Source: Guillardia theta CCMP2712
Taxonomy: Eukaryota > Protista > Cryptophyta
Direction: 5' to 3'
Assembly: GCF_000315625.1 (NCBI RefSeq)
Contig: NW_005434659.1
Location: 699,848 to 763,847, forward strand
DNA length: 64,000 bases
Shown: one piece after another, positions 47,328 to 51,273 of the stretch
How positions within the stretch are numbered: position 1 is the first letter of the stretch
Layout: every line of letters begins with the position of its first letter
Position numbers and translations under genes: made by a program
Notes under the pieces: model-generated
What the model saw: the letters and a program-made list of their open reading frames with translations, nothing else
The model's database searches: none
Told to the model about the DNA's origin: nothing

Positions 47328-48743
47328 ATGCAGACCATAATCCTAGCAGTCGCTCTGGTTTCCTCGATAGCGTGGACGAATGCAGCACAGGGCCCTCTGT
47401 TACTCCCTGCTCAGGAATCTCTTGCAAAGATCCAACGACATGGCTATGTGCCGTTCAAGAGACACATTCCTTCCAACTTGAATCTTCGCGGTGGAGGAAA
47501 GGGTAACGTTCTCATCACCGGAGGTGCTGGGTACATTGGTACGCATTGTGCTGTTACGTTGCAAGAAGCTGGATACACAGTGATGATCCTGGACAACTTC
47601 AGCAACTCATGCAAGAAGAGTATTGAGAGAGTTGGAGAGATCACTGGGAAGTCGATCGAGAAAGTGTTTGATGTGGATATTCGTGACAAGGCAGCGCTGG
47701 ATAAAGTGTTCAAGGAAAACAAGGTTGACGCGGTAATTCACTGTGCGGGCTTGAAAGCTGTGGGCGAATCGGTGAGAGAGCCAATCGCATATTATGAAAA
47801 CAATTTTGTTGGAGCTCTCAATTTGATCAAGGCCATGTCTGCAGCAGGATGCAAGAAAATCGTCTTCTCTTCGTCTGCCACTGTGTATGGGAACCCTGCC
47901 AAGGTACCTATTACCGAGGATTTCCCACTGCAATGCACAAACCCCTACGGGAGAACCAAGTTCTTCATCGAAGAGATGTTGCGTGATGTAGCCAATGCAG
48001 ATCCAGAATGGAAGGTCATCAACTTGAGATATTTCAATCCTGTGGGAGCACATTCGAGTGGCAAGATCGGAGAGGACCCATCGGGCATTCCCAACAATCT
48101 TATGCCTTACGTGACCAAGGTTGCAATCGGCAAGCTCGAGAAGTTGACTGTGTTTGGAGACGACTACGACACTCCCGACGGCACCGGAGTCCGCGACTAC
48201 ATCCATGTGATGGATCTTGCCAAGGGACATGTTGCTGCTGTGGACAAGCTCTTCTCGATCGAAGGGGAGGTGAGCGACATGCGTAGTGTCGCTCTTGCAC
48301 GCTGATAGCATGCAGGTTGTGTACAACCTGGGAACTGGTCATGGGTACTCCGTCCTTGATATGGTCAAGGCGATGAAGGAGGTGATGAATCTTTCAGTCT
48401 CGTTTTGTTTGGAGTTGACGAAGGGGAAAACTCGATCAGGCGAGCGGCAGAGAAGTTCCATACGTGATTGGGCCGCGTCGATCAGGAGATGTGCCCACGT
48501 GCTATGCTGATGCAGCAAAGGCAAAGCAGGAGCTGGTCAGTCGATCGAAGTGTTGAGATGGTACTCTGACATCCTACTTAGCACTGGGAGGCCAAACTTG
48601 GGGTAAAGGAGATGTGCCAAGACGCGTGGAACTGGCAGGTAGAGCCCTTCCCCTCCTTACTCCTTCCCCTCCTCACTCCTTCGCAGTGCAAGAACCCCAA
48701 TGGCTACCGGGAAGAAGCTGAGCTCGCTGGTGCGAAGAAGTAA
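47328..48743 (+). CDS. GALE: UDP-glucose 4-epimerase with signal+transit leader ending in LRGG
   Basis: [58 protein letters not shown]; four introns at the 3' end. Confidence 0.95.
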
Positions 48744-49041
48744 TCTGATCGGATCAGGCTGAGGCCTTGAGGCGGCACACACATGTTCGCCTCATTTGCT
48801 GATGAGCACGTATGGGTCACATCGCTTGTCCGCCATCACCACGAGGATGTCAAGGGCAGGGCATGACTACCTCATATACGTTAGCCCTGTTTACTAAAAT
48901 GAAGTATGAGCCAGTTCGTCCCCAGGCTGCTTCAATCAGGAAAATCTCTCCCGTCCATGGAGGCTCCAACAGCAGCTTCTTCAACTATGGACCATCCTCT
49001 CCTCGCTCTTTGTGTGCTGTGATATCCCTGTCTTCTTCGAA

Positions 49042-51273
49042 TCACAGGGGGCTGCCCTCCACCGGCTGTCCCAGTAGAGGATCCATGCTTTCTTCCATCT
49101 CCTCATACGTCCCCTGTCAAACGGCACAGTCAGACCTGCAGCAATCTTAGCAAGAACCTGAGCTGACCTGGTACCAAGATAAGGCCAGGAGTCCGATGCT
49201 CGTGGCTCCGAGGATACAGGCAGCGACCAGCAGGCAGATGACGAGAAGCGAAGGTCCACCATGCGGCACCGCGAAGATGGCGAAGACAGAGCTGCCAGTA
49301 TCGAGGATGACGTGGATTCCCTTCTGCCTTGGGGTTCCAACCTCAAGGATGGCATAGTAGATGTAAGAGTTGCTCGTCGTCATAGGAATCCTCTCCACGT
49401 CGTGCGTGAACCCCAGGAGCCTCCTTTGCCCACCCAGCGATGGGTTGTGCAGGGGCGGCTCCTCATCACTCACCATCATCCCGTTCTGTACAGGATACGC
49501 GCCTCCCTGTTCTGCTGGCATTTGTGGGCTCGCGTACTGAGGAGCGTACTGGCCCGCCGCTGAGTAGCTCCCCTGCTGCGGCGGGAAGGCAGGGCCGGCG
49601 TCCATGGGATGAGACACGAAGGTCTGATATTGGACCTGCTGCGAGCCCGGGCTCGGTATCATGGGTTGGACACGCTGACTTGCGCTTTGAACCACAGGGG
49701 AGATAGACTGCTGCTGCTGCTGCTCCTCAGGACGGATGGGAATCGCCGGGATGGTCATGGGCTGAGGTTTCTGAACCTTCTTCTTGCCGAGAGGAACATG
49801 GTTGCGATCCCCAATCTTCTTGAACTGAGTGGTGAGCTGATAGCCAGGGGCTCGTTGGCCAAGCGTGACCTTTGGTTGCATCGGATCGTTGAGGTCATGT
49901 ACGACTACCATCCTCCGGAAGAAGACATCTCCGAGCAGGAAAGTTCGAGGAGTTGACTTCATCTTCATCACGCAAGGCTTGTCGTCCACCATGTAGTCGT
50001 CGTACGGCAGGGAGAACGTCTGCCCCTCGATGGTGATGTAGATGGTGGGCTCATCGAGATCACCGAAGTACTTCTGGAAGGACTTGAAGGGGCTTGCAAG
50101 TAGCCCCCCCTCAAACGTGTCGTCGGGAACCACCAGGCAGGATGTACCGGAGTCAAGGATGGCCTGGATGGCGATGGACTGATCCCGAAACTGCAGGAGC
50201 TCGTGATCACCGATCTTGAGGCTCTGCACGTCGATCATGTAGTGCATGAATGCTGATGTGCCGTCGCCGAGCGGGCTGGCCCTCACCCCTGTCGTCACCG
50301 TCTTGCCCTTCACTGAAGATGGGTCGTATCCTCCCAAGACCAGCTCCCCCCGGTCCTCCGAGAGCATAAGGGTGAACACTCGATTCATGAGGATGTTGCT
50401 GTTGTCCTCGTCTGCTTTCGTTGGGTCTGTGAGCGCCCAGAACAAAGGATAAGGAACGCTGCGCAGAGCCGCTGCCGGGAAACCCATGCCGAGAATGCCG
50501 TCTGCCTGCGCCCAGTCGTGTCCCTTGCTCTTGGTCACGCATCCGAAGCGTGTGTTGACGTAGTAGCTGCCCAGTTGCACTACGTCCTTGGCTACGAAGC
50601 CAGTGAGAGAGGCGTCATCGAGGTACTCGACCTTGAAGAGCTGCTCTTCGTTGTAAAAGGATGTGCTCTTATTCGGATGAAATTGCCCGCACATGCTTGA
50701 TGCCACGAGCGAGACAAGAATCAAGCTCTTCAACAGCCCGCCAGTGAAGGTTGGCGAACATATCGGACGACAGTGGGCGGCCACGTGCGAAGCTAGTCTC
50801 ATCCTCGAGTCCTGGTTCATACAGGTAGTGTTGCAAGTGATAGATGATGGCTCAGACGCAAGAAGGGAAGGAGGGCATGAATGATAGGTCTGGGAGGGAG
50901 TGTGGACCACAGTAGAATCCATTGCAAGATCGAGAGGGCACGGAGATGCTGGTGACGAAGAGGATGGCAGCACCTCAGAGAGAGGAGGAGGAGGAGACTC
51001 CGAAGAAGCAGCAAGCAGCTCCTCCGGCCCCCCTCCATGGTAGAGGCAGCCGCCGCCTCCCTCTCCTGCCCCCATGACGTGGGTGCTGTTTGGTGTAATT
51101 TGACCCCATCCCCACTCATTCCCTTGAACTTCATTGTAGCCCTCATCCCCTAACATATAATCCTCAGAGGCAGAAAGGCGGGCTCTATGCAGCAGGAACG
51201 GGGCATGCGGAGAGATAGCGCTGAAGATGCTGCCGCTGCTGTCAGGAGAAGGTGGACAGGATGGTTCTGTCAT
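49042..51273 (-). CDS. Pepsin-family (A1) aspartic protease, membrane-anchored, apparently circularly permuted
   Basis: ORF 49147..51273 contains DGILGMGF, AILDSGTS and FLLGDVFFR, later YYAILEVGTP..VILDTGSS, then a TM helix. Probable last exon GTYEEMEESMDPLLG..* ends at 49042. The start may be M158 (50802). Confidence 0.85.

What the first reader, a model, noticed from the sequence alone, without database searches (positions are those of the whole stretch)
49042..50802. Circularly permuted pepsin-family aspartic protease
Seen in one uninterrupted ORF, in this order: hydrophobic signal (GLLKSLILVSLVASSMCG); QFHPNKSTSF (the 'FDPSKSST' segment that normally FOLLOWS the first catalytic Asp); flap FKVEYLDDAS; DGILGMGF; second-lobe AILDSGTS (D at 50152-50154); FLLGDVFFR and the end of the fold KVTLG. 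Next come HVPLGKKK (~49777-49800, like the VPLxKK start of pepsinogen propeptides), a Q/P-rich linker and RRLL (~49414-49425). Only then come RIPMTTSNSYIYYAILEVGTPRQKGIHVILDTGSS (first-lobe strand, D at 49300-49302), a TM helix and a tail with YEEM. Established: A1 proteases run propeptide, YY..IGTP..DTGSS, then DSG/DTG. Inference: the propeptide and the first ~45 mature residues have moved to the C-terminus with both catalytic Asp intact. This gives a permuted zymogen whose internal propeptide could be cut at RRLL (a site-1/subtilisin RxLL-type site), leaving a two-chain enzyme tethered by the small DTG-bearing chain.
Basis: partly seen in the sequence, partly recalled or inferred. Interest (0 to 1): 0.92.

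Follow-up and report, generated by a model that had tools for sequence, protein, structure and literature searches.

The report
Circularly permuted pepsin-like protease family
This Guillardia theta gene is expressed and encodes a pepsin-type protease whose first ~45 residues, including one of the two catalytic aspartates, sit at the C-terminal end next to a membrane anchor; every pepsin-type gene examined in this alga that could be read in full has this order, and I found no published description of it.

Summary
Window 50802..49042 (minus strand, one 54-nt intron) encodes a 568-aa protein, in this order: signal peptide; pepsin fold from about canonical residue 47 to the end, with the flap Tyr and the second catalytic motif DSG (D217); a 134-aa linker; the canonical N-terminal ~45 residues with the first catalytic motif DTG (D501); a TM helix; and a cytosolic tail with YEEM.

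- **Expression:** transcript contigs from three studies are colinear with the genome, and they end about 280 nt upstream of the start codon with no further exon.
- **Orthologs:** they begin with a signal peptide followed directly by GQFHPNK.
- **Same genome:** 18 of the 21 A1 loci examined show the same order. No N-terminal piece was found at the other three, and none is canonical.
- **Other organisms:** more than 200 proteins share the order. They come from at least seven cryptophyte genera, Ancoracysta, Cochliopodium and environmental data.
- **Conservation:** both catalytic Asp are invariant in 78 aligned sequences.
- **Structure prediction:** AlphaFold2 and a two-chain test with controls place the C-terminal piece in the N-lobe against the second catalytic loop.

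The linker shows no significant similarity to pepsinogen propeptides. Cleavage at RRLL is untested. I found nothing on a permuted A1 protease in the literature searched. This scan had not noted it elsewhere.

The parts
48877..51084 (-). mRNA as seen in RNA data. The 5' ends of the transcript contigs lie at 51069-51084 and a poly(A) site lies near 48877.
   Evidence: Contigs of runs X1, X2 and X5 (three studies) cover 51083..49167 and 49112..48700 with no mismatches. Raw RNA reads of X19 carry loose poly-T ends at 48877.
49167..50802 (-). Coding exon 1 (545 codons, counting from the ATG at 50802). The start codon is not settled: in-frame ATGs also lie at 50820 and 51075.
   Evidence: Orthologs P0002 and P0003 have 41-47 residues before GQFHPNK, which fits a start at 50802 or 50820.
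49113..49166 (-). Intron of 54 nt, GT..AG, phase 0.
   Evidence: The joint 49112/49167 is seen in 5 raw RNA reads (X19) and in one contig each of X1, X2 and X5. Protein P0001 (92% identical) reads SWYQ|GTYEEM across it.
49042..49112 (-). Coding exon 2: cytosolic tail GTYEEMEESMDPLLGQPVEGSPL plus the stop codon. YEEM fits a YxxPhi sorting signal.
   Evidence: A YxxPhi motif is present in the tails of 62 of the 119 family members that have a TM segment.
50689..50802 (-). Signal peptide, or signal anchor (residues 1-38, hydrophobic core LLKSLILVSLVASS).
   Evidence: Sequence. Orthologs P0002 and P0003, and paralogs L002, L004, L005, L007 and L010, have an N-terminal hydrophobic signal followed by the F-P-x-x-S-x-x-F segment, with no DTG before it.
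49810..50688 (-). Body of the pepsin fold (residues 39-331). It corresponds to canonical residues ~47-326 and holds flap Tyr60, DGILGMG at 101 and the second catalytic motif DSG at 217.
   Evidence: Pfam Asp model positions 38-307, E 1e-37. Chymosin residues 50-319. AlphaFold2 pLDDT above 90. Foldseek top hits are pepsin and chymosin, E 1e-15.
50152..50154 (-). Codon of catalytic Asp217 (canonical Asp215, motif DSGTS).
   Evidence: Invariant in 78 aligned sequences.
49408..49809 (-). Linker (residues 332-465). It has a conserved basic motif HVPLGKKKVQK (335-345), a Q/P-rich low-complexity insert, and a conserved EEPPLHNPSLGGQRRLLGFTHDVE just before the N-terminal strand.
   Evidence: AlphaFold2 pLDDT below 50 for 332-465. 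Motif alignment. The family's linker has a median of 38.5 aa, against 134 aa here by these residue bounds (137-273 aa in this orthogroup by the HMM-based measure).
49414..49425 (-). RRLL (residues 460-463), a candidate processing site.
   Evidence: Conserved in P0001-P0003, and as RRLS in Ancoracysta P0026. Cleavage was not tested.
49261..49407 (-). Relocated N-terminal piece (residues 466-514). It corresponds to canonical residues ~1-43: the N-terminal strand, YY..EVGTPRQ, the first catalytic motif DTGSS, and strand VFAIFAV.
   Evidence: The family profile matches chymosin 2-42 at E 2e-9. hhalign against canonical N-termini gives E 5e-20. AlphaFold2 pLDDT 87-96 with four strands. Two-chain test.
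49300..49302 (-). Codon of catalytic Asp501 (canonical Asp32, motif DTGSS).
   Evidence: Invariant in 78 aligned sequences. Thr502 is predicted to touch Ser218.
49174..49242 (-). Transmembrane helix (residues ~521-543), starting six residues after the relocated piece.
   Evidence: AlphaFold2 helix 519-547. 119 of 131 family members with enough C-terminal sequence have a hydrophobic segment after the N-piece.

Best explanation
The gene encodes a real, expressed, circularly permuted member of the pepsin (A1) family. It belongs to a sizeable family with the same permuted order.

**Order of the chain.** The chain break lies in the surface loop that holds the Cys45-Cys50 disulfide in pepsin. The order is: signal peptide; canonical residues ~47-326 (flap Tyr, rest of the N-lobe, whole C-lobe with the second catalytic Asp); a linker; canonical residues ~1-43 (the N-terminal sheet strand and the psi-loop with the first catalytic Asp); a TM helix; a short cytosolic tail.

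**Shown.**
- The order in the DNA.
- Colinearity in the mRNA.
- The same order in paralogs and in other organisms.
- Both catalytic motifs are invariant.

**Predicted.** The C-terminal piece inserts into the N-lobe and pairs its DTG loop with the DSG loop, so one normal bilobed active site forms. This can only happen once the whole ectodomain has been made.

**Inferred.**
- It is an active, acid-working endopeptidase.
- It is held on the lumenal or extracellular face of a membrane by the small DTG-bearing segment, as a type I protein.
- Its YEEM tail sorts it to endosomal, lysosomal or phagosomal membranes.
- The linker is longer than the connection appears to require (an expectation from known pepsin structures, not measured here), and it has conserved basic and RRL motifs. 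It may act as an internal prosegment. If so, it would be cut, by the enzyme itself or by another protease, to give a two-chain enzyme held together non-covalently. Cathepsin D has such a two-chain form.

**Likely origin (inferred).** A tandem duplication and fusion of a canonical gene, followed by loss of the first N-terminal piece and of the second body.
For: **Sequence and RNA**
- Motifs and coordinates are as described.
- Pfam Asp matches model positions 38-307 at E 2.8e-37.
- Transcript contigs from three runs of three studies are colinear from 51083 to 48700 with no mismatches and only the 54-nt intron removed. Raw RNA reads show the same joint and a poly(A) site.
- Orthologs P0002 and P0003 start with a signal peptide followed by GQFHPNK.

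**Same order elsewhere**
- In the same genome the Pfam model hits positions 1-3x downstream of positions ~40-310 in the same frame at 8 other loci.
- With two HMMs, 18 of 21 loci read body then N-piece, and none reads the canonical order.
- The same HMMs sort 136 permuted proteins from 68 canonical ones among the first hits. The canonical set serves as a positive control for the method.
- They find 67 more permuted proteins among 131 newly fetched representatives at 50% identity.

**Conservation and homology**
- D217, G219, D501, T502, G503 and S504 are invariant in 78 sequences.
- Family profile against chymosin: positions 362-402 match residues 2-42 (E 2e-9) and positions 35-314 match residues 50-319 (E 8e-17).

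**Structure prediction**
- AlphaFold2 gives pLDDT above 90 for residues 40-330 and four confident strands at 470-511, with a disordered linker between them.
- Foldseek top hits are gastricsin, pepsin and chymosin at E 1e-15.
- Two-chain test, body 40-331 against piece 464-516: score 0.90, best of 3 controls 0.03. That mark was reached by 51 of 78 solved complexes and 2 of 108 mismatched pairs. The runs agree in at least 94% of contacts, and the partner's pLDDT is at least 84.
- Predicted contacts include 218 with 502, 104-106 with 499-502, and 153-155 with 471-472. These are the pairings I expect from known pepsin structures.

**Family traits and tree**
- 119 of 131 members have a TM segment after the piece.
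- In trees built on the body alone, the permuted proteins form one side of a single branch, SH-aLRT 99.
Against: - No biochemical or structural experiment exists. The fold completion is a prediction. Two-chain A1 proteases have been solved, so the two-chain score may partly reflect memory of those complexes. It shows likeness, not binding.
- The window's own C-terminal piece is a weak Pfam match on its own (18.5 bits, cut-off 19.9) and finds nothing in the PDB by phmmer.
- The start codon is uncertain. An in-frame ATG at 51075 lies 9 nt from the contig ends. If it is used, the hydrophobic segment becomes an internal signal anchor.
- The prosegment role of the linker has no statistical support.
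- Subcellular location is inferred from a four-residue motif only.
Confidence: 0.82

Rival explanations
1. The fold is permuted and complete, but the protein is not a working protease. It could be a binding protein or inhibitor-like protein that has kept the pepsin fold, as the xylanase inhibitor TAXI-I and the pregnancy-associated glycoproteins have.
For: Pfam TAXi_N also matches (E 1e-7). No activity data exist. The window's copy has diverged around the flap (YLDDAS instead of the paralogs' YADGT).
Against: Both catalytic motifs are invariant in 78 sequences. The flap Tyr and the DGILG strand are kept. That pattern is not expected if catalysis had been lost. The TAXi_N match covers only the region it shares with the Asp model.
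Confidence: 0.08
2. The C-terminal piece is only the stump of a second, truncated tandem domain and does not join the first. The body would then lack its first catalytic Asp and would need a partner chain, for example a dimer, or would be inactive.
For: Tandem N-B-N-B proteins exist in nature (P0157, P0268, P0310). So truncated tandems are conceivable.
Against: A useless stump would not keep G-TP-Q and DTGS invariant across 78 sequences. The family also holds the linker near 38-39 aa. Both structure predictions place the piece in the N-lobe with high confidence, against controls at 0.03.
Confidence: 0.05
3. It is an artefact: a misassembly, a read-through of two neighbouring genes, or a missed upstream exon that carries the normal DTG.
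For: The genomic open frame runs on upstream to 51273 without a stop. NCBI gene models of several paralogs are truncated.
Against: RNA contigs from three studies are colinear and end at 51069-51084. The neighbouring HAT1 transcript starts at about 51183 on the other strand. Orthologs from other sources and 17 further loci in this genome show the same order.
Confidence: 0.01

Closest known systems
Canonical pepsin-like (MEROPS A1) aspartic proteases: pepsin, chymosin, gastricsin, cathepsin D
   Same: Bilobed fold (Foldseek E 1e-15). Two Asp-Thr/Ser-Gly loops, the flap Tyr and the DGILG strand. 23-26% identity to pepsin and chymosin over the body.
   Different: The first ~45 mature residues, with Asp32, follow the C-lobe instead of preceding the rest. 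The Cys45-Cys50 loop is replaced by the new chain ends. No recognisable N-terminal propeptide follows the signal peptide.
BACE1/BACE2 (memapsins): type I membrane-anchored A1 proteases with a cytosolic sorting motif (from general knowledge)
   Same: Signal peptide, lumenal A1 domain, a single C-terminal TM helix and a short cytosolic tail with a sorting signal. BACE matches the N-piece part of the profile.
   Different: In BACE the anchor follows the C-lobe of a canonical-order domain. Here it follows, after six residues, the strand that carries the first catalytic Asp. The two are not close relatives.
Two-chain forms of A1 proteases (cathepsin D light and heavy chains; plant cardosin and phytepsin after removal of the insert) (from general knowledge)
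   Same: A small N-terminal chain carrying Asp32 is held non-covalently to a large chain. This is the arrangement proposed here if the linker is cut. The body and the piece dock as separate chains in the test.
   Different: In those enzymes the chains arise by cutting a canonical-order precursor. Here the small chain is encoded last. Cleavage is not shown.
Swaposin, the plant-specific insert of plant aspartic proteases: the textbook circular permutation linked to this family (PMC3320104, PMC8683733)
   Same: A natural circular permutation found in an A1 protease gene.
   Different: There the permuted unit is the inserted saposin-like domain, not the protease fold. The family here has no such insert.
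Engineered domain-rearranged pepsinogen (Lin, Koelsch, Loy and Tang, Protein Science 1995; recalled from memory, not retrievable)
   Same: It shows that a pepsin fold with reordered segments can fold and be active.
   Different: It is man-made, and whole lobes were swapped rather than a 45-residue piece.

Membership tests
Peptidase family A1 (pepsin-like) | Significant match to the family model | tested here: met
   Pfam PF00026 scores E 2.8e-37, 129 bits, against a cut-off of 19.9. All 78 aligned members match it.
Peptidase family A1 (pepsin-like) | Bilobed pepsin fold | tested here: met
   AlphaFold2 model with pTM 0.70 and pLDDT above 90 over the fold. Foldseek against the PDB puts gastricsin, pepsin and chymosin on top, E 1e-15, TM 0.62-0.68 by target. 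This is a prediction only.
Peptidase family A1 (pepsin-like) | Two catalytic Asp-Thr/Ser-Gly motifs, one per lobe, facing each other | tested here: met
   D217-S-G and D501-T-G are invariant in 78 sequences. Ser218 is predicted to touch Thr502, and residues 215-221 lie in the interface with 495-513. The geometry is predicted, not solved.
Peptidase family A1 (pepsin-like) | Flap with the conserved Tyr (Tyr75 in pepsin) | tested here: met
   Y60 in FKVEYLDDAS. It aligns with the Y of xYADG in the family consensus.
Peptidase family A1 (pepsin-like) | Canonical order: propeptide, N-terminal strand and first DTG, then flap, then second DTG | tested here: not met
   The order is swapped. I therefore file it as a topological variant of A1, not an ordinary member.
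Peptidase family A1 (pepsin-like) | Pepstatin-sensitive endopeptidase activity at acid pH | not testable with these tools
   Needs expression and an assay.
Natural circular permutant | Two segments, each homologous to the canonical protein, in swapped order within one polypeptide | tested here: met
   Profile positions 362-402 match chymosin 2-42 and positions 35-314 match chymosin 50-319. One mRNA carries both segments.
Natural circular permutant | No copy of the moved segment is left at the original place | tested here: met
   There is no DTG or N-piece match between the signal peptide and the body in this gene, its orthologs or its paralogs. The transcript contigs end about 280 nt upstream of the ATG with no further exon.
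Natural circular permutant | The moved segment takes its original place in the fold | tested here: met
   Prediction only. AlphaFold2 gives pLDDT 87-96 for residues 470-511. Two-chain test 0.90 against a best control of 0.03, with contacts to the DGILG strand, the sheet strand 153-155 and the DSG loop.
A1 zymogen with a prosegment | A segment homologous to the A1 propeptide that precedes the mature N-terminal strand | tested here: inconclusive
   No PF07966 hit in 78 members. hhalign of linker against propeptide gives E 0.21. A conserved basic motif does lie at the matching distance, and it is predicted as an ordered strand in paralog P0073.

The most novel reading that the evidence does not exclude
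The permuted, membrane-anchored form is an old lineage of A1 proteases. It is shared by Cryptista, Ancoracysta and Amoebozoa, and in cryptophytes it has replaced the canonical pepsins altogether. The linker is the retained prosegment of the second copy in an ancestral tandem gene. It works as an internal inhibitor and is excised at the conserved RRL site, leaving a soluble heavy chain held on the membrane only by the 45-residue strand that also supplies one catalytic Asp. Release or exchange of the heavy chain would then be a new way to switch such an enzyme on or off.
Probability: 0.2. Interest if true: 0.85.

Novelty: new variant of a known kind. Interest (0 to 1): 0.72.

Why it matters
Pepsin-like proteases are among the best-studied enzymes, and their chain order is treated as fixed. 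This finding bears on four things.

- **Protein folding.** A large natural family builds the same active site from a chain that starts after the first catalytic loop and ends with it. The fold therefore tolerates a break at the Cys45-Cys50 loop. The active site also cannot form until translation is complete.
- **Zymogen control.** It gives a natural test case for whether a propeptide can work as an internal linker.
- **Annotation.** Domain models report these proteins as partial Asp domains, and gene predictors cut off the C-terminal piece, as in GUITHDRAFT_122682. An active-site residue goes missing from the record as a result.
- **Cryptophyte biology.** The A1 loci that could be read in full in Guillardia theta are all of this type, mostly with a membrane anchor and tyrosine-based sorting motifs. 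That points to a distinctive endolysosomal or surface protease system.

Tried and rejected
- **Propeptide homology of the linker.** No Pfam A1_Propeptide hit in any of 78 members. Profile-profile comparison of linkers with canonical propeptides gives E 0.21 and probability 0.3%.
- **The window's C-terminal 111 residues alone.** Pfam Asp is just under its cut-off, and phmmer finds nothing in the PDB. Only the family profile makes the match strong.
- **Tandem N-B-N-B proteins as intermediates.** P0157, P0268 and P0310 nest inside canonical clades as recent duplicates. They are not sisters of the permuted clade. They illustrate the route but are not the ancestor.
- **Single origin including Cochliopodium.** The P0370 branch is very long and its place is unresolved. 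Its nearest sequence relatives are canonical pepsins at E 1e-11. One origin is neither shown nor excluded for it.
- **Literature.** Six full-text searches found no report of a permuted A1 protease fold. The hits concern swaposin. The library lacks most subscription journals, so this is not proof.
- **Earlier notes of this scan.** None concerns this protease.
- **Geometry.** Model coordinates could not be read, so the Asp-Asp distance and the position of the linker strand were not measured. Only contact lists and confidence values were available.
Full report
**1. What is in the sequence.**
On the minus strand one open frame runs from 51273 to 49150 (708 codons). Pfam finds the eukaryotic aspartyl protease domain at E 2.8e-37. 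It matches only model positions 38-307 of 315, so the stretch that carries the first catalytic motif is missing at the front.

The Asp codon of DSGTS is at 50154-50152 and that of DTGSS at 49302-49300. HVPLGKKK lies at 49800-49777 and RRLL at 49425-49414. Names attached to related proteins identify the genome as Guillardia theta CCMP2712. It has 87 Mb in 669 contigs.

**2. The gene model, from RNA.**
Assembled transcript contigs from three runs of three different studies lie on the window from 51069-51084 down to 48700. They have no mismatch and a single 54-nt gap, 49113-49166, bounded by GT..AG on the coding strand. Raw RNA-seq reads of a fourth data set show the same joint in five reads and a poly(A) site near 48877.

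A 92%-identical protein from an independent source reads straight across this joint. So the body, the linker, the DTG piece, the helix and the tail lie on one mRNA.

The contigs stop about 280 nt upstream of the ATG at 50802. The divergent HAT1 gene's transcript begins about 100 nt further on. That leaves no room for an upstream exon, and none is seen.

The orthologs P0002 and P0003 begin with an ordinary signal peptide followed at once by GQFHPNKS. The start codon in Guillardia is not settled. In-frame ATGs lie at 51075 (9 nt from the contig ends), 50820 and 50802. Ortholog lengths favour one of the last two.

**3. It is a family trait, not an accident of this locus.**
A six-frame search of the whole genome with the Pfam model found 29 matches. 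At eight other loci a match to model positions 1-3x lies downstream of a match to positions ~40-310 in the same open frame. No locus has the 1-3x piece upstream.

I built two HMMs from the family, one for the body and one for the N-piece, and ran them on 21 loci. Eighteen read body then N-piece, including four genes whose body is split by many introns. In three loci no N-piece was found in the stretch fetched. None is canonical.

The same two HMMs work as a control. They read 68 canonical proteases (cathepsins D and E, plant and fungal enzymes) as N-piece then body, about 10-15 residues apart. They read 136 other proteins as body then N-piece.

An exhaustive profile search across the junction found 251 representatives at E 1e-10 or better. 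Of the 131 proteins newly fetched from its top hits, 67 are permuted; most of the others are fragments.

Named sources of permuted proteins are:
- cryptophytes: Guillardia, Hanusia, Rhodomonas, Hemiselmis, Baffinella, Cryptomonas paramecium and Teleaulax;
- Ancoracysta twista;
- one sequence from the amoebozoan Cochliopodium minus.

**4. Where the chain was cut, and what was kept.**
The family profile aligns to chymosin in two pieces. Profile positions 362-402 match chymosin residues 2-42 (E 2e-9), and positions 35-314 match residues 50-319 (E 8e-17). The break therefore falls in the short surface loop after the strand that follows DTGSS. From general knowledge of pepsin, this is the Cys45-Cys50 loop.

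In 78 aligned sequences D217, G219, D501, T502, G503 and S504 are invariant. So are the G-TP-Q of the N-piece and the GD.F of the C-lobe. The flap Tyr is present. That pattern is what selection for catalysis would leave.

**5. Does the piece complete the fold?**
AlphaFold2, run with the 78-sequence alignment, gives pLDDT above 90 for residues 40-330. It gives four confident strands for 470-511 (block means 87-96). Residues 332-465 are disordered, and a helix spans 519-547. Foldseek puts gastricsin, pepsin and chymosin on top at E 1e-15.

I then tested the body (40-331) and the piece (464-516) as two separate chains.
- The score was 0.90, against 0.03 for the best of three controls.
- That mark was reached by 51 of 78 solved complexes and by 2 of 108 mismatched pairs.
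- The runs agree in at least 94% of contacts, and the partner's pLDDT is at least 84.

Three sets of predicted contacts stand out:
- Ser218 with Thr502, which from general knowledge is the link between the two catalytic loops;
- residues 104-106 of DGILG with 499-502;
- the sheet strand 153-155 with the relocated N-terminal strand 471-472.

Two-chain A1 enzymes have been solved, so this pass may draw on memory of them. It shows that the piece looks like the missing part. It does not show that it binds in the cell.

**6. The linker.**
Across the family the linker has a median of 38.5 residues, with a sharp mode at 38-39. This gene's orthogroup carries a Q/P-rich insert that stretches it to 137-273 residues.

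Two parts of the linker are conserved:
- a basic motif at its start, HVPLG-KKKVQK here, in the same columns as APKS-KLSLIK in paralogs;
- the residues just before the N-strand, with RRL shared between this orthogroup and Ancoracysta.

In the short-linker paralog P0073 the whole linker is predicted as ordered (pLDDT 90-97). The basic motif forms a nine-residue strand, followed by a short helix.

This fits a retained prosegment, but the similarity is not significant. I could not see where the strand sits in the model. The idea remains an inference, and so does cleavage at RRLL. Pepsin-like enzymes prefer hydrophobic residues at the cut site, so a cut at Leu-Leu or Leu-Gly by the enzyme itself is as plausible as one by a site-1-type protease.

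**7. Membrane anchor and tail.**
Of the 131 family members with enough C-terminal sequence, 119 have a hydrophobic segment after the piece. It is usually followed by Arg-rich residues. Sixty-two have a YxxPhi motif in the tail.

In this gene the helix starts six residues after the piece, and the tail carries YEEM. From general knowledge, YxxPhi motifs bind clathrin adaptor complexes. A type I protein sorted to endosomal, lysosomal or phagosomal membranes is the likeliest reading, but it rests on the motif alone.

**8. Origin.**
Trees built on the body alone place all permuted proteins on one side of a single branch (SH-aLRT 99). The exception is the very long Cochliopodium branch, whose place is unresolved. 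These are quick-search trees with long branches, and the canonical sample was limited to what the searches returned.

Tandem N-B-N-B proteases exist in environmental data. They show that the first step of the usual duplication-and-trimming route does occur in this family. They are recent duplicates inside canonical clades, not ancestors of the permuted family.

**9. Comparison with what is known.**
The protein passes every test of A1 membership that can be run here except chain order. I file it as a topological variant of A1.

Functionally, the nearest analogue is a membrane-anchored A1 enzyme such as BACE, with the difference that the anchor follows the Asp32 strand. The circular permutation classically linked to aspartic proteases is that of the saposin-like plant insert (PMC3320104, PMC8683733), which is a different domain.

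Six full-text searches found no report of a permuted A1 fold. That library is incomplete.

**10. Verdict.**
The permutation is real, expressed, conserved and widespread. The zymogen and cleavage details remain hypotheses.

Circular permutation as a phenomenon is well known, and function here is still only predicted.

Noticed in passing
window 51038-50817 (minus strand): An upstream ORF of 73 codons lies in the mRNA leader, in another frame. It starts MEGGRRSCLLLLRS. Its TGA stop (50819-50817) overlaps the in-frame ATG at 50820 as ATGA. That layout could allow termination and re-initiation at the protease start.
   Followed up: partly
proteins P0157, P0268, P0310, P0330, P0338, P0372: Environmental A1 proteases made of two or more complete canonical units in tandem (N-B-N-B). 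The two halves are 87-100% identical. This is the kind of intermediate from which a permutant can arise.
   Followed up: partly
protein P0373: An NCBI record (MGB1592005.1) calls a permuted family member a 'pepsin-like aspartyl protease' of a Promethearchaeia (Asgard) MAG. It sits in a 90%-identity cluster with a Teleaulax amphioxeia protein, so it is probably cryptophyte DNA binned into the archaeal genome.
   Followed up: no
protein P0121 against P0038: The NCBI gene model GUITHDRAFT_122682 (414 aa) lacks the C-terminal DTG piece that the transcript-derived protein of the same cluster (512 aa) has. Gene prediction may trim other members of this family in the same way.
   Followed up: no
protein P0370, Cochliopodium minus: An amoebozoan transcriptome holds one permuted A1 protease with the same layout: signal, body, linker, N-piece, TM eight residues later. 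It also holds a canonical one (P0416). Its relation to the cryptophyte family is unresolved.
   Followed up: partly
protein P0155: A 709-aa environmental protein combines a papain-like C1 peptidase (PF00112, PF08246) with a canonical A1 domain.
   Followed up: no
window 48700-48900: The 3' ends of the protease mRNA (minus strand, poly(A) near 48877) and of the convergent NAD-dependent epimerase gene (plus strand, ORF 47328-48305) overlap or abut. Transcript assemblies join the two genes into one contig.
   Followed up: no
window 51084-51183: Only about 100 nt separate the 5' ends of the protease transcript and of the divergent HAT1-like gene (Hat1_N, E 1e-17). This is likely a shared bidirectional promoter.
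   Followed up: no
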